Shown: positions 4,212 to 57,820 of the stretch, piece by piece
Layout of the letters: the number at the start of each line of letters is the position of its first letter
Numbering within the stretch: the first letter of the stretch is position 1
Virus record (IMG/VR): IMGVR_UViG_3300020202_000061
Span: 124,001 to 188,000 of that record
Reading direction: 5' to 3' (one strand)
DNA: 64,000 nucleotides
The notes under the pieces: generated by a model
Told to the model about the DNA's origin: nothing
Seen by the model: only the letters and a program-made list of their open reading frames with translations
Databases searched by the model: none
Made by a program: the position numbers and the translations under genes

Positions 4212-4240
4212 TTGACATTCTCAAGGGTTTGCCTTAAATA
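4212..4240 (+). promoter_or_regulatory. Hybrid promoter TTGACA-N17-TAAATA for tmRNA
   Basis: Exact spacing; same design at 54045-54073 (tRNA cluster) and 5628-5656. Confidence 0.7.
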
Positions 4241-4246
4241 GGTCTT

Positions 4247-4515
4247 GTGACGTTGAAGCGTTGAAGAACGCTACTCTGGACCTGGGGGCGGTACCCAGCG
4301 GCTCCACCAAAATGCCCTCGGGCGCTATGGGGCCGAAACAGGATCGACAGGTAGTCAGTAGGCACGTGGAGTCATCCGGCGGAAGCTCGGTTAACGCAAC
4401 ACAAACAGTAATTGCCAACGATAACTTCGTTGCGGACGAGGGTTTCCGTATGGCCGCCTAAGGCGGTCCTCGGTAATCCAAATCCATCGCCCGGTGGGCG
4501 GGAAACAGAAACACC
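4247..4515 (+). ncRNA. ssrA: Circularly permuted two-piece tmRNA (alphaproteobacterial type); tag ANDNFVADEGFRMAA
   Basis: Acceptor piece first: T-arm CTGGG-GGCGGTA-CCCAG then CGGCTCC-A-CCA (ends 4309); 19-nt spacer; coding piece starts GGGGCCGAAACAGGATCGAC (4329). GGGGCCG/CGGCTCC gives the G3:U70 Ala determinant; tag 4414-4461; 3' GGAAACAGAA motif. Outer ends approximate. Confidence 0.93.
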
Positions 4516-4545
4516 AGAGAGCCGCCTTCGGGCGGCTCTCTTTTT
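4516..4545 (+). terminator. Intrinsic terminator of tmRNA
   Basis: AGAGAGCCGCC-TTCG-GGCGGCTCTCT followed by TTTT. Confidence 0.9.
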
Positions 4546-4561
4546 GTGTGGGATTACGGAA

Positions 4562-45321: not shown

Positions 45322-45373
45322 CGCTTGCCTCAGAACCAAATCCCCACCATATTTGGGGTTGGAAAGAAGAATA

Positions 45374-46960
45374 ATGGGGAATGCAGGTACTTTTGTCGGA
45401 GCCAAACTCACAGAGGATTGCGCAGATCGCCTGATTGAGTGGATGACCCAGCAGGGTATCCCGAATCCGACTCCCAAAGAGGAGCTTCACTGTACGGTCG
45501 TCTACTCGGAAGAGCGTGAGATCAAGATCACACCGCTCGCCTATGAGCCGCCGCTGGAGATCGATCCGCGATTGTTCAAGTTCAAGCACTTCGGCGAGAA
45601 CCGCGAAGTTCTGGTCCTGGCATTCGACCGGCCTGAACTCGCTTACCGACATAAGCTGCTTCGCGAGAAGTATAAGCTGGGCTGGAAGTTTCCCAGCTAC
45701 ATCCCGCACGTCACTCTGAGTTACAACGCTCCGGAGCACATCGAGGTGTTGCCGGATTTTCCGCTGGTGTTCCAGGGAGAAGAGGTTGGTGGGTTCAATC
45801 CACCGGAGGAGTCTGCTGCGGCCGAGCATCTGGAGAAGAACGAACTCAGTGAGTATTACGAGATCGTCAACGATGAGCCCGTGCGCAAGAAGAAGCGCCC
45901 AGAACCGCCGAAGAAGTTGATCGCGCAGAATCTCATAAAGTTGGGCCTGAAAGAGGATCGTCATCATGAGGACCATCCTCGTGTGCAGGAGCCGGGTCCA
46001 CAACAACTCTCGTATACGAGTTCGATGCGACAGAACGCTGTGGGACAGAAGTGTCAGGTCATCGTGCAGATGCCGGTGCAGGACTTCCTCCGTCTGACCA
46101 CGACGAATGACGCGGATATCGAGACGGTCTTCCGCAAGCAGGCTCATCCGCTGGATTCCTACAATCACTGGAACCGCATGGGCGATGAGCGTGAATACGC
46201 GTCCCAGGTCAATCAGGGCAAGACCTCACAGGATAAAGATTATCAGTGGGGACGGATCGTCGGTCCGTTCTTGCGCATCGACATTGAGCCGCCAGCGGGC
46301 ACCTTCGGTAAGGTCTCCGGCCACGAAGGTCGTCATCGAGCAGCAGCCGTGTGGAACGCCGGAGGTAAAGTGATCCCGGTCGCGTTGTGTCTGCGTCCCT
46401 TCAAGGGAATGTTCCCGAAGAGCTATGGACCCGAATACGAGGCACATCGGGAGCACATCCCGATGGCCGTGCACGGCCAGTTTCGTTCGATCAGTGTGAG
46501 CACGAGGAATTGGAAGGTGATCGAACCAGACCTGCTCAAGCCGTATCGTCGCACGAACGAATCAGTGCTGATGGAGGTCGCAGGCTCGTTCTCGTGGTTT
46601 CATCCTAAGACCGAGCAAGAGGTCACTGCGGAATTCGGAAAGAACGAACACTGGGACCTCGTCAAGGCGAATCCGACGAGGTTTGGCATGACTCGTGCGG
46701 AAGTGAATCAGCCTAATGCGCGGATCGATGATGTCTTCAAACATGGCTGGGTTCGAGTCAACTATTACAGAGGTGTCTGGTACTTTCATGGACAAACCGC
46801 TGCATTGGTGCAGGCCGCAGCCAAGCACTACGCGTGGGCACATGAAGGACTACACGAGGTGATTCTGGATATCGTCGAACCCAACTACAAGTCCTACACC
46901 CTGATGGGTCCGGCCATCGAAAAGTTTCTCAAGCACGGAGTGCTGCCGGAGTGGCGCTAA
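45374..46960 (+). CDS. acb1: Acb1/T4 gp57B-like 2H phosphodiesterase fused to a ParB/Srx-like domain and the repeated unknown domain
   Basis: GTFVGAK...IPNPTPKEELHCTVVYS...LVL.FD..EL..RH...YIPHVTLSY aligns by eye with T4 57B; GHEGRHRAAA ParB-like motif. Confidence 0.8.
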   Translation: MGNAGTFVGAKLTEDCADRLIEWMTQQGIPNPTPKEELHCTVVYSEEREIKITPLAYEPPLEIDPRLFKFKHFGENREVLVLAFDRPELAYRHKLLREKYKLGWKFPSYIPHVTLSYNAPEHIEVLPDFPLVFQGEEVGGFNPPEESAAAEHLEKNELSEYYEIVNDEPVRKKKRPEPPKKLIAQNLIKLGLKEDRHHEDHPRVQEPGPQQLSYTSSMRQNAVGQKCQVIVQMPVQDFLRLTTTNDADIETVFRKQAHPLDSYNHWNRMGDEREYASQVNQGKTSQDKDYQWGRIVGPFLRIDIEPPAGTFGKVSGHEGRHRAAAVWNAGGKVIPVALCLRPFKGMFPKSYGPEYEAHREHIPMAVHGQFRSISVSTRNWKVIEPDLLKPYRRTNESVLMEVAGSFSWFHPKTEQEVTAEFGKNEHWDLVKANPTRFGMTRAEVNQPNARIDDVFKHGWVRVNYYRGVWYFHGQTAALVQAAAKHYAWAHEGLHEVILDIVEPNYKSYTLMGPAIEKFLKHGVLPEWR

Positions 46961-51077: not shown

Positions 51078-51368
51078 CTACTGGGGATCGACCGTGGCTG
51101 ACTGTGGTTCGTTGGTGTCGGTAGCAACCTCACCACGGCGTAATCTGCGTGTGGGCTCGGGACGTGGTGTGGTGGGCTGACGGGGATCGATCTTTTCCTG
51201 ATCGGTTTCGATCTCGACGATCAGTGCAGTATCCTCGTTGAACACGTCCTTCAGACTGGACTGGAAACTCTCACGCACATCGCTGGTGAGTGCGGTCGTG
51301 GTAGTGTCATCGCTGCGCACGATGCGGCTAAAGCGAACGGTCATGGTTTCGGTGACAAGCTTGGCCAT
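51078..51368 (-). CDS. Hypothetical protein
   Basis: ORF track; GGGG RBS. Confidence 0.55.
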   Translation of the reverse strand: MAKLVTETMTVRFSRIVRSDDTTTTALTSDVRESFQSSLKDVFNEDTALIVEIETDQEKIDPRQPTTPRPEPTRRLRRGEVATDTNEPQSATVDPQ

Positions 51369-51461
51369 AGAAATCCCCTGGTTTTACTCTTAAAGATTGG
51401 GCATCTTTGGAGTTTTTCAAGAAGTCTTGACGCGATCTGTGAGATTTGCTATATATTCGCC

Positions 51462-51830
51462 ACGACCGTGATGCCGGTGTGAGTCCGGTTCGCCCGAGGG
51501 CATCGCGCCCGGAGGCGGTAGCTCAAAAGGCCCATCTGCTACCACAGAGGGGCGAATAAACCCTGGTAGGGGAGAGCGCGGTCCCTTCTGCTGTTTGGTT
51601 CAGGTCATCGCGTTCACGTCGAAGCGGATACACCGGGCGAGCCTGCAATCCGTACGGGGCCTGCCAAGGGTCGCTAGACCAGTGGTGATCTGAACCAAGC
51701 AGCAATCGGCTAGTAGTCCTGGATCAGAATGCCAGGGCGAATACCGATACTCGTGTGGGTGCCCATCAATTCGTCACCTGAGGACGGAAGGCCGATGGGT
51801 AAACGGGAGCGTGTGTCAACGGCCCACACA
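51462..51830 (+). ncRNA. Unidentified ~370-nt structured RNA
   Basis: TTGACG-N17-TATATA promoter (51427-51455); no credible ORF; long helix TGCTGTTTGGTTCAGGTCATCGC / GTGGTGATCTGAACCAAGCAGCA and several other stems; ends approximate. Confidence 0.65.
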
Positions 51831-51884
51831 CCTTGATTCTCCAGGAATACGCACCATCTGATCCCCACGATTATGGGGGATTTC

Positions 51885-52247
51885 ATGCTGATTCGGATTC
51901 CAGAATTCAAGAACAAGGTCTATTGTCCGCTTCACGTCGTGAGCGTGTCCTGGTCCAAGACCGACCGTCATGGGTGGTGGGTAAATCACTGGTTTGTCAA
52001 TTTCTTTCGCCCCCTGATCGGACTCAAACCGAAGGAAAAGACTTGGATTCCAGATGAGTGGCACCAGTATCCGCCGACCGTCTATGTGAGGTATTCCTCG
52101 GAGGATCGGGACTACATAGAGTTCGAAATGGGACCCGATGGCGATGCCCAGGCCGAAGCCTGCTATCAGAGGATTATCTCCGAGGTCAACGAATTTTATC
52201 GCACGACTGGAATCAAAAAACCCCTTGACGGTTTGAGTTTGCTCTGA
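51885..52247 (+). CDS. Hypothetical protein
   Basis: GGGGG RBS before ATG 51885. Confidence 0.55.
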   Translation: MLIRIPEFKNKVYCPLHVVSVSWSKTDRHGWWVNHWFVNFFRPLIGLKPKEKTWIPDEWHQYPPTVYVRYSSEDRDYIEFEMGPDGDAQAEACYQRIISEVNEFYRTTGIKKPLDGLSLL

Positions 52248-52259
52248 TATAAGCCCGCC

Positions 52260-52396
52260 TCCCGACATGTCGGGAATGGTGATGAACGCACGTAGTAATC
52301 GTGTCGGAGGCCCCTAGGGGTCCGCCCTGAATGCCCTCGGTTCATAGCCTTGGGACTAAACTGGGAGTCGGGGTTACGGCCGACACATCGCTACCA
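52260..52396 (+). ncRNA. Unidentified ~140-nt structured RNA
   Basis: TTGACG-N17-TATAAG promoter (52225-52253); stems TCCCGAC/GTCGGGA, TGGTGATG/CATCGCTA, GTGTCGG/CCGACAC, GCCCTGA/TCGGGGT. Confidence 0.55.
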
Positions 52397-52469
52397 AGTT
52401 ATCCACAAGAAATTCTAAAATCGGTCACAAATCCCTTGGCCTTTTTTAGCGAACCGCATATATAGGGAT

Positions 52470-53281
52470 CGGCAGCGTGATGCCGTCAGCACAACCGGGG
52501 TGACCCGGCCAAAGCGGAGAAGGTCCCCACCAACCCCGCGCCTCGCAAGAGGAGCACTCACGCGACAACCCAGGTCTGCCCCAAAAGGGTGCATCGTGAG
52601 AGCGGTGCGAAACAGGACAAGGTGAGGTAGTCAAGCGGCCCTCAAAAGGGGTCGTCAGGTAGAGGTCGCACTCTACCGCTTCCTGCGAAACACCACCTGT
52701 GAGGACTCAAGGGAAGGGGTCGGGTTGACCGTTAGCGCGGGAAGGCTCGATTCCAGTCTGATGGGAGAGGTTCGGCTGTTCAAGGCTCGCCAGAAATGGA
52801 GGGTCACGTAGCCGGGCTAAGCTTCCAGAAAGACCGTTAGTAGGCCCGCAAGGTCGAAAGCAAAGCACGGGTGTATTCTGGCCGGGCAACCGGTTGGATC
52901 ACAGTCAGTGGCTCGTGTTTGGTGGTTCCGGTAGGCAATGGCTTTTGAACGGCCAATCCTATTGATGGAAACGGAAAAGGAAAGACCGCTGACAGCGTGG
53001 GCTGAAAGAGGCCAACGTCCCTCAGGGACACCACCGGGACCCCAAGTCCAGGTGGCATCTAGGGAAAGGGTCTATCGGGATTTTCGCGAGTCCAGGTAGG
53101 TTCAGGAACTGGAGAAGATGCCTACGTTAAGCGCAAATGCCAGCGCTCTATAAATGGGCGGCCTTGCTTGGCTACCAACGAAAGTTGGTGGATGAGGTTC
53201 GAAACCCGGTGTGCTTACCCATCGGGGAATAATGGATCGAAGGCCGAGTATGCCTCACCTTAGTCTAGGGTGGGGCTTTTT
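52470..53281 (+). ncRNA. GOLLD-like giant structured RNA (~810 nt)
   Basis: Size, phage/tRNA context, purine-rich with many GNRA and CAAAAG-capped hairpins; TAGTAGGCCCGCAAGGTCGAAAG and CTACCAAC-GAAA-GTTGGTGGAT..GGGGAATAAT elements resemble GOLLD as I recall it; terminal hairpin plus U-tract. Confidence 0.6.
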
Positions 53282-53319
53282 CTTTTGCAGAACTCTGAAA
53301 ATTCTGATATATCCTGGGG

Positions 53320-54048
53320 ATGTCCGACGAGAATCCCTTCGAGCACCTATCTGACTCGGAATTGATGGACCGTCTTGGTGTGTCCTGGAATTCCGTGCTG
53401 AACCTGCGTGCGCAGATCAAGAAGGCCAAGGAAGCTCTTCCGGCCGCGTCCGAGGAATTGGAACAGCTTGAACGGGAGGCGAGCAAGCGCAAACGCCGCG
53501 ATGAATGGCTGGCGAAGCAGCCCGAGTTCGAACGAGCCCGTCAGGACCCGGAGTGGCAGGCGTGGCGCGTGGCATTCCTAGCGCGGGCTCGGGCGGCCGA
53601 AATCAACACACTGAACCTTCCAACGCCGGGTTTGAATTTCGTCCATGAGGACGTGTCTCTGACAGACCTCAACCTGTTCATGGCTCCGATCCATCCCGAG
53701 GAAGAGTTCGTTCGGTTCGACAATTCCTGGACCATGGCCCAGGTTGTGGTGCACGTCGGTCTATTCCAGAGCCTGACTCAGGCCAGAAAGAACGGTTTCA
53801 ACAAGCCGATTCCCAGTGGTTTCTCCCAGCATGTGATGGGGAAGAAGAAAACCACGGTGTTCATTCTGAACCGCTTACCCAAAGAGCCTAAGCCCACGCG
53901 TAGCATGTCTTGGGTCTACCAGGGTGTCAGCTATACCTACGGAAATGGCTTTTACACCTGCACCTATCCCGATGGTATTTGGTCGGTCTCGTTCAATGGA
54001 GTGCATTTCGTAAATGGAAAAGTTGTGCGTTCGAAAAGAAACTCTTGA
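53320..54048 (+). CDS. Hypothetical protein with possible S4-like RNA-binding motif
   Basis: Coiled-coil N-terminus; MAQVVVHVGLFQSLTQARKNG resembles the S4 motif. Confidence 0.55.
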   Translation: MSDENPFEHLSDSELMDRLGVSWNSVLNLRAQIKKAKEALPAASEELEQLEREASKRKRRDEWLAKQPEFERARQDPEWQAWRVAFLARARAAEINTLNLPTPGLNFVHEDVSLTDLNLFMAPIHPEEEFVRFDNSWTMAQVVVHVGLFQSLTQARKNGFNKPIPSGFSQHVMGKKKTTVFILNRLPKEPKPTRSMSWVYQGVSYTYGNGFYTCTYPDGIWSVSFNGVHFVNGKVVRSKRNS

Positions 54049-54210: not shown

Positions 54211-54286
54211 GCCCCTGTAGCTCAGTGAATAGAGCGGCCGGTTTCTACCCGGTAGGTCGGGAGTTTGAATCTCTCCAGGGGTGCCA
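54211..54286 (+). tRNA. tRNA-Arg(UCU)
   Basis: GCCCCTG/CAGGGGT acceptor, loop TTTCTAC, encoded CCA. Confidence 0.9.
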
Positions 54287-54287
54287 A

Positions 54288-54364
54288 CCAGCGGTAGCTC
54301 AGAGACAGTAGAGCGCCGGAGTTAAATCTGGAGGTCGGGGGTTCAATTCCTTCCCGCTGGGCCA
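54288..54364 (+). tRNA. Atypical tRNA with 6-nt anticodon loop (GTTAAA); possibly Asn-derived
   Basis: CCAGCGG/CCGCTGG, G73, CCA; stem CCGGA/TCTGG closes only 6 nt. Confidence 0.65.
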
Positions 54365-54385
54365 TTTTGTAGAGGAAACACGACT

Positions 54386-54424
54386 ATGTTGTTGCGTGAA
54401 GAGGAATCGATGAAGGCTGTGTAA
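54386..54424 (+). CDS. Leader peptide MLLREEESMKAV (GAA-GAG-GAA) of the tRNA-Glu operon
   Basis: AGAGGA RBS 9 nt upstream; 3' end overlaps the antiterminator strand. Confidence 0.7.
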   Translation: MLLREEESMKAV

Positions 54425-54482
54425 TGTGACCAACATTGTTGGTGCACACGCAGCCGCCTGGAGAAATCCCGGCGGCTTTTTT
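54415..54482 (+). promoter_or_regulatory. Transcription attenuator: antiterminator 54415-54455 versus terminator 54452-54482
   Basis: GGCTGTGT pairs with ACGCAGCC around the GTG-ACCAAC/GTTGGT-G-CAC hairpin; terminator AGCCGCC-TGGA-GAAA-TCCC-GGCGGCT-TTTTT shares AGCC. Confidence 0.75.
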
Positions 54483-54490
54483 GTTGCTCT

Positions 54491-54567
54491 GTCCCTGTCG
54501 TCTAGCGGTCAAGGATGCCACCCTCTCAAGGTGGAGATCACGGGTTCGAATCCCGTCAGGGACGCCA
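54491..54567 (+). tRNA. tRNA-Glu(CUC)
   Basis: GTCCCTG/CAGGGAC, CCACC-CTCTCAA-GGTGG, TTCGAAT, CCA. Confidence 0.95.
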
Positions 54568-54581
54568 AGAATACGAACGAT

Positions 54582-54657
54582 GGCTCGTTCATCTAGTGGC
54601 CTAGGATACCGGACTTTCACTCCGGGTACACGGGTTCGACTCCCGTACGAGCTACCA
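54582..54657 (+). tRNA. tRNA-Glu(UUC)
   Basis: GGCTCGT/ACGAGCT, CCGGA-CTTTCAC-TCCGG, TTCGACT, CCA. Confidence 0.92.
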
Positions 54658-54659
54658 GA

Positions 54660-54734
54660 CGCCCATTCGTCTACTGCCTAGGACACTGGCCTTTCAAGCC
54701 AGGGGAAGGGGATGGATACCCCTATGGGCGACCA
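54660..54734 (+). tRNA. tRNA-Glu(UUC) with non-canonical T-loop
   Basis: CGCCCAT/ATGGGCG, CTGGC-CTTTCAA-GCCAG, T-loop ATGGATA, CCA. Confidence 0.85.
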
Positions 54735-54760
54735 GTTTCAGTTCCCGAACGGTAGTAGGG

Positions 54761-54837
54761 TGCTGGGGTGAAGCGGGGTTCGAGTCCCCAAGCGGATCGG
54801 TTCGACTCCGACTCGCGCAGGTGCAATATCCCCAGCG
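54761..54837 (+). ncRNA. tRNA-like element with two T-loop hairpins
   Basis: GCTGGGG/CCCCAGC closing stem; GGGG-TTCGAGT-CCCC and TCGG-TTCGACT-CCGA. Confidence 0.5.
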
Positions 54838-54841
54838 TTTT

Positions 54842-54922
54842 CCCCCGTGGGATTGCGGTTGGTGTGATCGCCGGTTTCTCAAATCGGAGCACAGATGGGT
54901 TCGACGCCCATACGGGGGACCA
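54842..54922 (+). tRNA. tRNA-Glu(CUC), divergent
   Basis: CCCCCGT/ACGGGGG, D-stem GATT/GATC, CCGGT-TTCTCAA-ATCGG, ATGGG-TTCGACG-CCCAT, CCA. Confidence 0.8.
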
Positions 54923-56608: not shown

Positions 56609-57820
56609 ATGGCGAAGTTTGAAGTGCCCGTGGTTCGCGTTCGTGCGGTCGAGAAGCATCCGAACGCTGATCGACTCGATATCGTCCGTATCGGCGACTA
56701 CAACTGCATCAGCAACAAGAAAGAGGACGGCACGTCCAGGTATGCGCCGGGCGATCTCGTCGTCTACGTCCCGGAGGGTGCCATCGTTCCAGAGTGGTTG
56801 CTCCGCATGGGCTTCTGGAATGAAAAGACCAACATGGGTCTGCTCGCCGGACCTCAGGGCAATCGCGTGAAGGCGGTGACCCTGCGTGGGGTCATCAGCC
56901 AGGGCATTATGTTTCCGGTCAGCACTGGTGACGTGCAGGGCTTTCCCCTGGGTGATCCCAACATGAACGCGCCCTGGATCAGCGTTGAAGAGGGTCAGAA
57001 CCTCGCGACCGATCTCAACATCATCAAGTATGAGCCGGAGATTCCCGATTGCCTCAAAGGTTCGGTTGCGTCCTGCCACGGATGGACTCTCAAGGGCGAT
57101 CTGGAGAACGTCAAGAAGTTCCCCGACATCCTCCAAGAGGGTGAGGAAGTCGTGATGACCGAGAAGGTTCACGGCGTCTACATGCAGATCGGTTATGTAC
57201 CGAATTTGGAGTTCGAGATCGATGCCGACGAGAGCAATGGGCTCTACAAGGATGGCGATTGGTTCGTCACGTCCAAGGGTCTGGCCGAGGTCGGCATGGT
57301 ATTTCAGTTGAACGAGGAGAACGCTGAGAACCTCTACGTGAAGATGTTTCGCAAGATGAAGGAACGTCTGGAGTGGCTCTACAACGACATGTACGAGAAG
57401 TGGCAACAGACTCAGGATCGTTACTACCCGGAGAATCGCCCGTTCTACCTGATCGGTGAACTTTACGGGCCGGGCGTCCAGGACCTCCACTACAGTTTCC
57501 AGCAGGAGTTCGTCGCCCACGACATCTACATGGGTCAGCCCGGCAACGGTTGGTATCTGGATGAGGATCAGTTCGCCTATCATACCGAAAGGGCTCACAT
57601 CGACCGTGCGCCGGTCCTCTATAAGGGTCCGTTCTCGAAGGGGGTGATGCTCCAGCACACGAGTGGGCCAAGCGTCTTGGCTCTCGGAAAGCACATTCGT
57701 GAGGGACTGGTGGTGAAGCCCATGCAGAACCGCCGAGACGACCGGATCGGTCGCGTCATGCTGAAATCGGTCAGCGACGAATACTTGCTCCGTAAGGGAG
57801 ACGCTACGGAGTACGCATGA
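56609..57820 (+). CDS. RNA ligase, DRB0094/Rnl2-like family with N-terminal OB domain
   Basis: HPNADRL, YVPEG, LRG.ISQG, motif I EKVHG, GELYGPGVQ, REGLVVK, LKSVSDEYL. Confidence 0.9.
   Translation: MAKFEVPVVRVRAVEKHPNADRLDIVRIGDYNCISNKKEDGTSRYAPGDLVVYVPEGAIVPEWLLRMGFWNEKTNMGLLAGPQGNRVKAVTLRGVISQGIMFPVSTGDVQGFPLGDPNMNAPWISVEEGQNLATDLNIIKYEPEIPDCLKGSVASCHGWTLKGDLENVKKFPDILQEGEEVVMTEKVHGVYMQIGYVPNLEFEIDADESNGLYKDGDWFVTSKGLAEVGMVFQLNEENAENLYVKMFRKMKERLEWLYNDMYEKWQQTQDRYYPENRPFYLIGELYGPGVQDLHYSFQQEFVAHDIYMGQPGNGWYLDEDQFAYHTERAHIDRAPVLYKGPFSKGVMLQHTSGPSVLALGKHIREGLVVKPMQNRRDDRIGRVMLKSVSDEYLLRKGDATEYA

What the first reader, a model, noticed from the sequence alone, without database searches (positions are those of the whole stretch)
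51427..51830. Unidentified ~370-nt structured RNA with a Y-RNA-like internal motif
Seen: strong promoter; a ~23-bp helix (51588-51703) whose interior contains GTCGAAGCG paired with CGCTAGAC, resembling the Ro-binding GNCGAANG motif; 3' stems TGCCCATC/GATGGGTA and GTGTGGG/CCCACAC. It shares CGTGATGCCG near its 5' end (51467 versus 52476) and CTCAAAAGG with the GOLLD-like RNA. I could not match it to RNase P, SRP, 6S or OLE.
Basis: partly seen in the sequence, partly recalled or inferred. Interest (0 to 1): 0.7.

Follow-up and report, generated by a model that had tools for sequence, protein, structure and literature searches.

The report
Structured leader RNA in jumbo phage
This is a real, conserved, highly folded RNA of a previously undescribed family that starts at a phage promoter and runs straight into a small orphan gene whose ribosome-binding site it locks in a hairpin; it is not a Y RNA, and in this phage it carries a faithful copy of a 16S ribosomal RNA hairpin.

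Summary
The sequence features are there. The window is part of a 347.5-kb jumbo-phage record. A conserved TTGAC-N17-TATATA promoter (51427-51455) drives a folded RNA that matches no Rfam family. I found five more lineages in soil, wastewater and cave metagenomes. The shared structure keeps 97.5% of cells paired, with 12 pairs changed on both sides against 0-2 in slid controls.

The RNA is modular. The constant core is the long helix (51590-51703), a 77-nt module (51753-51829, 96% identical where coding DNA is about 77-82%), a linker, and a hairpin that buries the Shine-Dalgarno sequence of an orphan 120-aa gene (51885-52247). No conserved terminator separates RNA and gene.

Variable add-ons are a 5' domain, tRNA-like elements in relatives, and a hairpin at 51704-51748 that copies 16S rRNA 1339-1378 (helix 43 and its junctions).

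My best reading (about 0.5) is a cis-acting translational leader with an unknown trigger. The main rival (about 0.3) is a processed, stable RNA of the phage's RNA island, which also holds a GOLLD-like RNA and a tRNA array.

The Y-RNA idea fails: no Ro gene, no YrlA or Y RNA match, and the motif is not conserved. No transcript evidence for this RNA was obtained.

The parts
51427..51455 (+). Sigma-70-type promoter: TTGACG, 17-nt spacer, TATATA
   Evidence: Read. TTGAC and GCTATATA are invariant in L002, L065, L067 and L070. The same motif occurs at 9 sites in the phage genome.
51465..51582 (+). 5' domain, closed by ACCGUG (51465-51470) paired with CGCGGU (51577-51582). It contains a GCCGG/CCGGU hairpin, a variable hairpin and an A-run loop hairpin. 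It is absent from L002 and L071.
   Evidence: Consensus folds and pair counts show double changes in helices 3 and 5. The deletion in L002 is seen.
51467..51475 (+). CGTGATGCC word, shared with the 5' end of the neighbouring GOLLD-like RNA (52476)
   Evidence: It is conserved in all four RNA1 copies that have a 5' domain and in all six GOLLD-like copies. These are its only two + strand occurrences in 347 kb.
51590..51703 (+). Long-helix domain: a 21-bp basal helix, conserved internal loops (ACGUCGAAGCGGAUACACC / GGGUCGCUAGACCAGUGG) and a variable apical hairpin
   Evidence: z -5.7. Four basal pairs have double changes among five lineages. The top of the helix is recoded in L071 (CGCCAC/GUGGCG).
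51704..51748 (+). Hairpin that copies 16S rRNA 1339-1378 (3' strand of h29, junction AGUA, helix 43 with loop AUCAGAAUG, junction GAAUAC). Present only in this phage, L002 and the relative in run X4.
   Evidence: blastn to 16S genes. Local alignment score 55 against 21.5 +/- 2.3 for shuffles. 38 of 41 positions match natural 16S genes that carry the same stem variant. One compensatory change in its lower stem in L002. Absent from L065, L067, L070 and L071.
51753..51829 (+). 3' module, 77 nt: outer stem GUGUGGG/CCCACAC, arm CCCAUC/GAUGGG carrying a UCGUC/GACGG hairpin, then UAAACGGGAG and a small hairpin. This is the most conserved part.
   Evidence: 96% identity to L002, where the flanking genes are 77-82%. 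Nearly invariant in five lineages. Kept in the cave and SRR31638529 lineage. Indels of 4, 1 and 1 nt rule out coding.
51830..51859 (+). Linker. UCUCCA (51838-51843) is a first possible partner of the Shine-Dalgarno sequence. CAUCUGAUCC (51855-51864) is complementary to the loop of the 16S-like hairpin.
   Evidence: 93% identity to L002. Alternative partner of the SD in the folds of L067 and L070. Loop complementarity has p about 0.007 to 0.04.
51860..51882 (+). Hairpin GAUCCCC/GGGGAUU that buries the Shine-Dalgarno sequence GGGGG (51875-51879), 5 nt before the start codon
   Evidence: C-to-U changes in L065, L067 and L070 keep G-U pairs while the loop sequence changes. The SD is paired with probability 0.94 or more in all five full-length homologs.
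51885..52247 (+). Orphan gene of 120 aa (MLIRIPE...), always downstream of the RNA. Its N-terminal half is basic and tryptophan-rich; its C-terminal half is acidic.
   Evidence: Six homologs at about 70-75% identity. Differences by codon position are 192/160/440. No Pfam, PHROG or distant relative. The structure model is poor, pLDDT 41.7.
52255..52414 (+). Conserved folded stretch after the gene ('RNA2'), possibly with its own promoter at about 52225-52255. It belongs to the same transcription unit.
   Evidence: Conserved hairpins with compensatory changes in five relatives. Weak match of the 3'-module model at 52298-52389 (24 bits).
52415..52449 (+). Terminator-like hairpin with a U run. This is the first conserved terminator after the promoter at 51427. 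It overlaps the -35 box of the GOLLD-like RNA's promoter.
   Evidence: Folds in the five relatives examined, with compensatory changes (GGUCA/UGGCC to GACCA/UGGUC; a longer stem in L065).

Best explanation
RNA1 is a conserved, modular, strongly folded RNA that forms the 5' leader of the mRNA for an orphan 120-aa phage protein. It most likely controls that protein's translation in cis.

Shown:
- Transcription signals are conserved.
- The RNA structure is under selection.
- The conserved sequence runs without a terminator into the gene.
- The gene's Shine-Dalgarno sequence is locked in a conserved hairpin, and a second possible partner lies 35 nt upstream.

Inferred:
- In the default fold, translation is off.
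- Some event at the nearly invariant 3' module and long-helix core frees the ribosome-binding site. The event could be binding of a protein, an RNA or a small ligand, or a refolding among the many mutually complementary GUGGUG-type and CACCAU- or CGUCAC-type segments.
- The changeable 5' parts are accessory modules that tune stability, processing or the signal sensed. These parts are the 5' domain, the tRNA-like elements in relatives, and the 16S helix-43 copy here.

The trigger itself is unknown.
For: - The promoter is conserved in all lineages that reach it.
- On five full-length homologs the consensus fold has 114 pairs, 13 of them with changes on both sides. On the four-sequence alignment, 97.5% of cells pair, with 12 double changes against 0-2 in slid controls and 0 of 500 shuffles reaching that number.
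- The long helix is recoded in the distant lineage L071.
- The module and linker are 93-96% identical where the adjacent genes are 77-82%.
- There is no terminator between the RNA and the gene. The first conserved one is at 52415-52449.
- The SD hairpin is kept through C-to-U changes opposite G while its loop changes.
- The SD is paired with probability 0.94 or more in all five full-length homologs.
- The gene follows the RNA in every lineage where the downstream DNA is held.
- In L071 the core sits between two genes rather than after a promoter. That fits a leader for the downstream gene.
Against: - There is no transcript evidence for RNA1. The only RNA-library contigs that fall on it are 16S rRNA fragments matching the helix-43 copy.
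- At 300-570 nt with removable modules, it is much larger than needed to hide a ribosome-binding site.
- tRNA-like elements ending in CCA at the 5' end in three lineages, and the position in an island of stable RNAs, point towards a processed stable RNA.
- No ligand, protein partner or alternative ON structure has been demonstrated.
- The homolog set is small (six lineages in two or three clades), so the covariation statistics are weak. The structure was also derived from the same sequences.
Confidence: 0.5

Rival explanations
1. RNA1 is a stable, trans-acting non-coding RNA of the phage's RNA island. It is cut out of the primary transcript, with RNase P or RNase Z acting at the tRNA-like elements in relatives. 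It works together with the ribosome, ribosomal proteins, tRNAs or the neighbouring GOLLD-like RNA. The downstream gene is merely co-transcribed.
For: - It lies in a block of RNA genes: RNA2, a GOLLD-like RNA (76.7 bits, E 2.7e-19) and a tRNA array.
- L065, L067 and L070 have one or two tRNA-like acceptor/T-arm elements between the promoter and the RNA. One ends in CCA, and its acceptor stem covaries.
- The 3' module shows extreme sequence conservation.
- It carries a 16S helix-43 copy.
- It shares a 5' word and A-run hairpin loops with the GOLLD-like RNA.
- GOLLD RNAs are reported near tRNA islands and to pull down ribosomes (bioRxiv 10.1101/2024.12.08.627333).
Against: - There is no terminator or recognisable 3' processing signal after the module.
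- The linker and SD hairpin are as conserved as the RNA itself.
- The soil metatranscriptome that holds the GOLLD-like RNA of this very phage (2 differences over 551 nt) gave no RNA1 contig, although such a gap proves nothing.
Confidence: 0.3
2. The RNA and the 120-aa protein are partners. The protein binds its own leader, either for autoregulation or as a ribonucleoprotein whose RNA is encoded just upstream of the protein gene.
For: - RNA and gene are strictly linked in all lineages.
- The protein has a basic, tryptophan-rich N-terminal half (pI 9.65) and an acidic C-terminal half.
- Both the RNA and the protein are orphans with the same narrow distribution.
Against: - The protein has no RNA-binding domain or any other recognisable fold.
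- Linkage alone is equally explained by plain cis regulation.
Confidence: 0.12
3. It is a Y RNA-like (YrlA-type) RNA that tethers a Ro60/Rsr protein.
For: - The word GUCGAAG fits GNCGAAN0-1G in this phage and in L071.
- RNA ligase genes lie nearby.
- Relatives carry tRNA-like elements.
Against: - No TROVE/Ro gene in the 347-kb genome, with positive controls ringing.
- No YrlA or Y_RNA match on the RNA.
- The word is GUCCGAAUG in four of six lineages.
- The nearby ligases are Rnl-type, not RtcB.
- The ends of the RNA do not form a Ro-binding stem.
Confidence: 0.02
4. There is no function. The region is spacer DNA that looks conserved because the relatives are close, and looks folded by chance.
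For: Only six lineages are known, some of them close to each other. The z-score of the whole RNA is modest (-2.7).
Against: - The module and linker are far more conserved than the flanking coding DNA.
- Double compensatory changes are concentrated in the predicted helices.
- The promoter is conserved.
- The core survives in a lineage whose neighbouring protein is only 54% identical.
Confidence: 0.03

Closest known systems
Ribosomal-protein autoregulatory leaders that mimic rRNA (for example uS7 on the str operon mRNA)
   Same: A leader RNA upstream of a translated gene carries a copy of an rRNA protein-binding site. Here that site is 16S 1339-1378, part of the h28-h29-h43 junction that uS7 recognises. 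The ribosome-binding site is controlled by RNA structure.
   Different: The regulated gene is not a ribosomal protein, and the phage has no uS7 gene. The mimic is an optional module, missing from four of six lineages. No binding has been tested.
GOLLD and ROOL, the large 'ornate' phage RNAs found near tRNA islands
   Same: It is phage-encoded, large, multi-domain and modular, lies next to a tRNA array and a GOLLD-like RNA, and has tRNA-like elements fused in some relatives. It shares a conserved 5' word and A-run hairpin loops with the neighbouring GOLLD-like RNA.
   Different: It matches neither family's model. It is shorter, has no terminator of its own, and leads into a gene.
Translational riboswitches and T-box leaders that sequester the Shine-Dalgarno sequence
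   Same: A long structured leader ends in a conserved SD-sequestering hairpin, and several alternative pairings are possible.
   Different: No known aptamer or T-box sequence is present. The ligand is unknown. It is larger and more modular than known classes.
Bacterial Y RNAs (YrlA) with Ro60/Rsr
   Same: It has a superficial GNCGAA-like word, and tRNA-like elements occur in relatives.
   Different: There is no Ro gene, no model match and no Ro-binding stem, and the word is not conserved.
RNAs encoded directly upstream of their protein partner (HEARO/omega RNA with IscB)
   Same: A large structured RNA abuts the start codon of an always-linked gene.
   Different: The protein is a 120-aa orphan without nuclease or other domains. 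There is no HEARO match.

Membership tests
Y RNA / YrlA | Match to the family covariance models (Rfam Y_RNA, YrlA) | tested here: not met
   No hit on 51456-51890 at E up to 10. The only YrlA lines are chance-level hits on tRNA genes and in L067.
Y RNA / YrlA | A Ro60/Rsr (TROVE) protein encoded nearby or in the genome | tested here: not met
   PF05731 search of the whole 347.5-kb record found no match. Positive controls rang in Deinococcus and Bacteroides. A host-encoded Ro cannot be excluded.
Y RNA / YrlA | Conserved GNCGAAN0-1G word in a tRNA-like module (recalled from the YrlA literature, not checked here) | tested here: not met
   GUCGAAG occurs in the window and in L071 only. L002, L065, L067 and L070 have GUCCGAAUG. 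ARAGORN finds no tRNA-like fold there.
Y RNA / YrlA | Ro-binding stem formed by the paired 5' and 3' ends | tested here: not met
   In the consensus folds the 5' and 3' ends do not pair, and the 3' end leads into the gene.
GOLLD RNA (RF02032) | Match to the conserved 3' half of GOLLD | tested here: not met
   RNA1 gives no hit. The neighbouring RNA at 52862-53271 gives 76.7 bits (E 2.7e-19, below the gathering score of 150).
rRNA-mimic ribosomal-protein leader | A segment that reproduces the sequence and structure of the protein's rRNA site | tested here: met
   41 nt are 88% identical to E. coli 16S 1339-1378, and 38 of 41 positions match some natural 16S genes. Stem differences are compensatory and the loop is identical. 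This holds only for the window, L002 and the relative in run X4.
rRNA-mimic ribosomal-protein leader | The regulated operon encodes the ribosomal protein that binds the mimic | tested here: not met
   The downstream gene is an orphan with no ribosomal-protein domain. No Ribosomal_S7 gene is present in the phage.
rRNA-mimic ribosomal-protein leader | Binding of the protein to the leader | not testable with these tools
   This needs a gel shift or pull-down with uS7 (and uS9) and the hairpin at 51704-51748.
Translational riboswitch / T-box | Expression platform that hides the Shine-Dalgarno sequence | tested here: met
   A conserved hairpin at 51860-51882. The SD is paired with probability 0.94 or more in five homologs.
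Translational riboswitch / T-box | A recognised aptamer or T-box sequence | tested here: not met
   No Rfam riboswitch or T-box hit at E up to 10 in the window or in relatives.
tRNA / tRNA-like structure | Cloverleaf or acceptor/T-arm fold recognised by tRNA finders | tested here: not met
   ARAGORN and the Rfam tRNA model find nothing in 51427-51884. Weak acceptor/T-arm elements exist only upstream of the core in L065, L067 and L070.

The most novel reading that the evidence does not exclude
RNA1 is the first member of a new class of large phage riboregulators that read the state of the host's translation apparatus. In this phage the inserted copy of the 16S h29-h43 junction would bind free ribosomal protein uS7, or another head protein. 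The hairpin's loop is complementary to the strand that locks the Shine-Dalgarno sequence. Protein binding would therefore decide whether the loop can open that lock. This would couple synthesis of the orphan protein to ribosome-assembly status, or else soak up uS7. The tRNA-like modules in sister phages would be alternative sensors plugged into the same invariant core.
Probability: 0.12. Interest if true: 0.85.

Novelty: new variant of a known kind. Interest (0 to 1): 0.6.

Why it matters
Large structured RNAs of phages (GOLLD, ROOL) are among the least understood RNAs known, and their partners are unknown.

This locus offers a second, unrelated structured RNA in the same island. It has three useful properties:
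- It has a measurable output, namely translation of the gene it leads into.
- It has a modular build in which natural variants add or remove a 5' domain, tRNA-like elements or an rRNA copy.
- It carries a concrete candidate ligand site, the 16S helix-43 junction that uS7 recognises.

These properties give simple experiments for asking what such phage RNAs sense. Those experiments may also show whether jumbo phages monitor or manipulate ribosomal proteins through rRNA mimicry.

Tried and rejected
**Family and paralog searches**
- Rfam at gathering and at E up to 10, on the window, on the RNA alone and on four relatives, gave nothing for RNA1.
- Paralogs in the genome by blastn: none.
- A covariance model of the 3' module found one weak second copy, inside RNA2 (24 bits). 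Its outer stem is not kept in three relatives, so I do not count it as established.

**Searches for relatives**
- IMG/VR searches with three flanking proteins and three DNA words found nothing, apart from one chance hit, L063.
- An 18-mer scan of JGI metagenomes gave 57 loci. All were chance hits except the phage itself.
- A first genome-contig scan gave nothing.
- Relatives were finally reached through exact-protein look-ups of the three neighbouring genes.
- Kin genomes cannot be drawn for a virus record.

**Expression**
Two rounds of run searching and read laying gave no RNA1 transcript. The high-depth 'RNA' signal at 51709-51744 is 16S rRNA cross-matching.

**The 120-aa protein**
- An HMM search of 1.84 billion representatives found only its own cluster plus one doubtful hit.
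- The AlphaFold model was too poor to search with (pLDDT 41.7).
- The Atlas gave no lead.

**Ideas rejected**
- Coding potential of the module: rejected because of frame-breaking indels.
- A terminator hairpin GUGUGU/ACACAC after the module: rejected because L002, L065, L067 and L070 break it.
- The window-specific pairing CGUGAUGCC/GGCAUCGCG in the 5' domain is not kept in L065 or L067.
- A tRNA-like reading of the 77-nt module (7-bp stem followed by ACC): rejected because the cave and L071 lineage shortens the stem and loses the ACC.
- Similarity of RNA2 and of the GOLLD-like RNA to rRNA: not above shuffles.
- A complex prediction of uS7 with the hairpin was not sent, because jobs with RNA give no verdict.

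Full report
**Where it lies**

The window is bases 124001-188000 of a 347,504-bp virus record, JGI soil metagenome contig Ga0196964_10000008, judged about 90% complete. It is a jumbo phage. It carries a two-piece tmRNA (4216-4552), a tRNA array (54211-54922), RNA and DNA ligases, and an Acb1-domain protein.

The finding sits in a block of non-coding DNA between a divergent 96-aa gene (51078-51368, minus strand) and a 242-aa gene (53320-54048).

**Checking the observation**

- Promoter: TTGACG, 17 nt, TATATA (51427-51455). The consensus scanner does not list it only because it demands T at the last -10 position. The same type of promoter occurs nine times in the genome and is conserved in relatives.
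- Fold: the + strand folds better than shuffles (z -2.7) and the minus strand does not (z -0.76). The helices hold many G-U pairs.
- Long hairpin: 51587-51706 alone has z -5.7.
- Shared words: the 10-mer and 9-mer shared with the GOLLD-like RNA are exact.
- Rfam: no match on the RNA at any threshold.
- Neighbour: the RNA at 52862-53271 matches GOLLD at 76.7 bits (E 2.7e-19), below that family's gathering score of 150.

**Finding relatives**

Searches of IMG/VR, and an 18-mer scan of JGI metagenomes, gave only chance hits. Relatives came from exact look-ups of the proteins of the three neighbouring genes:

| Locus | Source | Note |
|---|---|---|
| L002 | SRR27686863 | lacks the 5' domain |
| L003 | SRR12900989 | last ~80 nt of the RNA plus downstream |
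| L065 | ENA ERZ2854929, 38-kb contig | |
| L067 | SRR22388024 | |
| L070 | JGI 3300068441, 409-kb contig | |
| L071 | SRR31638529 | most distant |

Read laying showed further partial copies in wastewater, freshwater and cave runs. The cave variant is the same type as L071. The family is real but narrow.

**Anatomy**

Alignments A4, A5, A10, A11 and A12 show a modular RNA. In order:

1. Promoter.
2. In L065, L067 and L070 only, one or two tRNA-like acceptor/T-arm elements.
   - One has a canonical T arm (GAGGG-UUCGAAU-CCCUC), an acceptor stem that covaries between L067 and L070, and an encoded CCA.
   - tRNA finders do not call them.
3. A 5' domain (window 51465-51582), closed by ACCGUG/CGCGGU. 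It is missing from L002 and L071.
4. The long-helix domain (51590-51703).
5. In the window, L002 and the wastewater copy only, a hairpin at 51704-51748.
6. A 77-nt 3' module (51753-51829).
7. A linker (51830-51859).
8. A hairpin (51860-51882) that pairs the Shine-Dalgarno sequence GGGGG (51875-51879).
9. The start codon at 51885 of a 115-120-aa gene.

The 141-aa gene calls in L065 and L067 are over-extended into the RNA. The true start, MLIRIPE, is conserved.

**Is the structure selected?**

Yes, within the limits of six lineages.
- On the four-sequence alignment, 97.5% of cells pair, against 37-42% when partners are slid. There are 12 pairs with changes on both sides, against 0-2 in slid controls, and no shuffle of 500 reaches the observed number.
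- With five sequences, 13 of 114 pairs have double changes.
- Four of the double changes lie in the 21-bp basal helix. In L071 the top of that helix is recoded from CAUCGC/GUGGUG to CGCCAC/GUGGCG.
- The apical hairpin has a different sequence but still forms a helix in the two clades.
- Against L002, the 3' module is 96% and the linker 93% identical, while the adjacent genes are 77% and 82%.
- Frame-breaking indels exclude a hidden coding region.

Caveats: the structure was derived from these same sequences, and the lineages fall into only two or three clades.

**Link to the gene**

There is no conserved terminator between the RNA and the gene.
- A possible GUGUGU/ACACAC hairpin after the module is broken in four relatives.
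- The first conserved terminator-like hairpin is at 52415-52449. It comes after a further conserved folded stretch ('RNA2') and overlaps the -35 box of the GOLLD-like RNA's promoter.
- The SD hairpin is kept by C-to-U changes opposite G while its loop changes.
- In partition-function folds of all five full-length homologs, the SD is paired with probability 0.94 or more. Its partner is either GAUCCCC (51860-51866) or the upstream UC(U/C)CCA (51838-51843).
- The gene is truly coding: pairwise differences by codon position are 192/160/440. Its N-terminal half is basic and its C-terminal half acidic.
- The gene is an orphan: no Pfam or PHROG family, no distant relative among 1.84 billion representatives, and an unusable structure model.
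- In L071 the core follows an unrelated 103-aa gene instead of a promoter, so there it is intercistronic.

**The 16S copy**

Positions 51704-51744 are 88% identical to E. coli 16S rRNA 1339-1378.
- The local alignment score is 55, against 21.5 +/- 2.3 (maximum 33) for shuffles.
- The four differences from E. coli inside the helix-43 stem are two compensatory pairs. The nine-base loop and both junction strands (AGUA and GAAUAC) are identical.
- The same stem variant exists in real 16S genes of 14 species genomes. RNA1 differs from those genes at only 3 of 41 positions.
- In RNA1 the strand that corresponds to h29 pairs with the bases after GAAUAC and so closes the hairpin. That pairing shows one compensatory change in L002.
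- The junction h28-h29-h43 is the site recognised by ribosomal protein uS7 (PMC13674486). uS7 is known to repress its own mRNA through an rRNA-like site (PMC10931766).
- The phage has no uS7 gene.
- The hairpin's loop has 8 contiguous Watson-Crick complements, 10 with one bulge, to 51855-51864, which is part of the strand that locks the SD. The p-value is about 0.007 against the shuffled linker, and about 0.04 when the whole upstream RNA is allowed.

This is suggestive only. The hairpin is absent from four lineages that keep the same linker.

A practical warning follows from this copy. The deep 'RNA-seq' signal at 51709-51744 in public runs is rRNA cross-matching, not expression of RNA1.

**Shared word with the GOLLD-like RNA**

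CGTGATGCC lies about 10-12 nt after the -10 box of both RNAs.
- It is conserved in all four RNA1 copies that have the 5' domain and in all six GOLLD-like copies.
- On the + strand of the genome it occurs only at these two sites.
- In L067 it follows directly after the CCA of the tRNA-like element.
- Its structural context differs between the two RNAs: a helix strand in RNA1 and a hairpin loop in the GOLLD-like RNA.

I cannot explain it. It could be a common protein or processing site.

**What it most likely is**

I put about 0.5 on a cis-acting translational leader. The invariant core (long helix, 3' module, linker) and the double-locked SD form a switch that is off by default. An unknown signal turns it on, and the changeable 5' modules tune it. 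The many mutually complementary segments make refolding plausible (GUGGUG, GUGAUG and UGGGUG against CAUCGC, CGUCAC, CACCUG and CACCAU), but this is inference.

About 0.3 goes to a processed, stable, trans-acting RNA of the RNA island. The tRNA-like elements, the size and the neighbourhood favour this rival.

About 0.12 goes to the variant in which the orphan protein itself binds the RNA.

**The Y-RNA reading**

It fails its membership tests: no Ro gene, no model match, the motif is not conserved, and there is no end-to-end stem.

**Expression**

None was shown for RNA1. The GOLLD-like RNA of this phage does appear in a soil metatranscriptome (551 nt, 2 differences), and a relative's appears in a rhizosphere one (669 nt, 40 differences). 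DNA carry-over in those libraries cannot be excluded.

**Novelty and score**

This is a new RNA family, unmatched in Rfam, of a familiar general kind: a structured leader or phage ornate RNA. Its unusual traits are plug-in modules, which include tRNA-like elements and a faithful rRNA copy.

Interest is 0.6. It is solidly real and gives a testable handle on phage large RNAs, but its function is still open and its distribution is narrow.

Noticed in passing
window 52466-53285: GOLLD-like RNA with its own promoter (TTGGCC 52436-52441, TATATA 52459-52464) and a strong terminator (53252-53285). Its 3' half matches Rfam GOLLD at 76.7 bits (E 2.7e-19), below the gathering score of 150. The same is seen in four relatives (75-86 bits). 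It is present in two metatranscriptome runs. It is probably a divergent GOLLD subgroup.
   Followed up: partly
window 52255-52414 (and 52298-52389): A conserved folded stretch ('RNA2') between the 120-aa gene and the GOLLD-like promoter, with a possible promoter of its own at about 52225-52255. It has hairpins with compensatory changes and a conserved UAGUAAU loop. The model of RNA1's 3' module hits it weakly (24 bits, E about 1e-4), sharing UAAACNGGGAG and ACGGCC. Whether the two are paralogous is unresolved.
   Followed up: partly
L067:756-833, L065:2709-2774, L070:4740-4910 (minus strand): Relatives carry one or two degenerate tRNA-like elements between the promoter and the RNA. Each has an acceptor stem plus a T arm; one has an 8-bp acceptor stem, a UUCGAAU T loop and an encoded CCA. 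tRNA finders do not call them. The best Rfam hint is the tRNA-Sec model at 16 bits.
   Followed up: partly
window 54288-54364: Within the tRNA array (Arg-UCU and four Glu genes) one gene is called 'tRNA-???' with a two-base anticodon (ta). The same odd gene is kept in L002, L065 and L070 with (ca). It may be a tRNA with an unusual anticodon loop.
   Followed up: no
window 4216-4552: A two-piece (permuted) tmRNA of the alphaproteobacterial type, with tag peptide ANDNFVADEGFRMAA. It hints at an alphaproteobacterial host.
   Followed up: no
window 51709-51744 in public RNA-seq runs: Very deep short contigs from metatranscriptomes lie here, with depth up to about 80,000. Their loose ends read as 16S rRNA, so they are cross-matches to the helix-43 copy and would give a false expression signal.
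   Followed up: yes
window 45353-46960 and 56609-57820: A 535-aa protein with an N-terminal Acb1 (anti-CBASS) domain, and an Rnl-type RNA ligase with a PHA02142 OB fold, flank the RNA island. A DNA methylase and an ATP-dependent DNA ligase follow.
   Followed up: no
G000:C1 193941, 218662, 229061 (outside the window): Further copies of the TTGAC-N17-(GA)TATATA promoter are followed by GC-rich, non-ATG sequence. These may start other non-coding RNAs of this phage.
   Followed up: no
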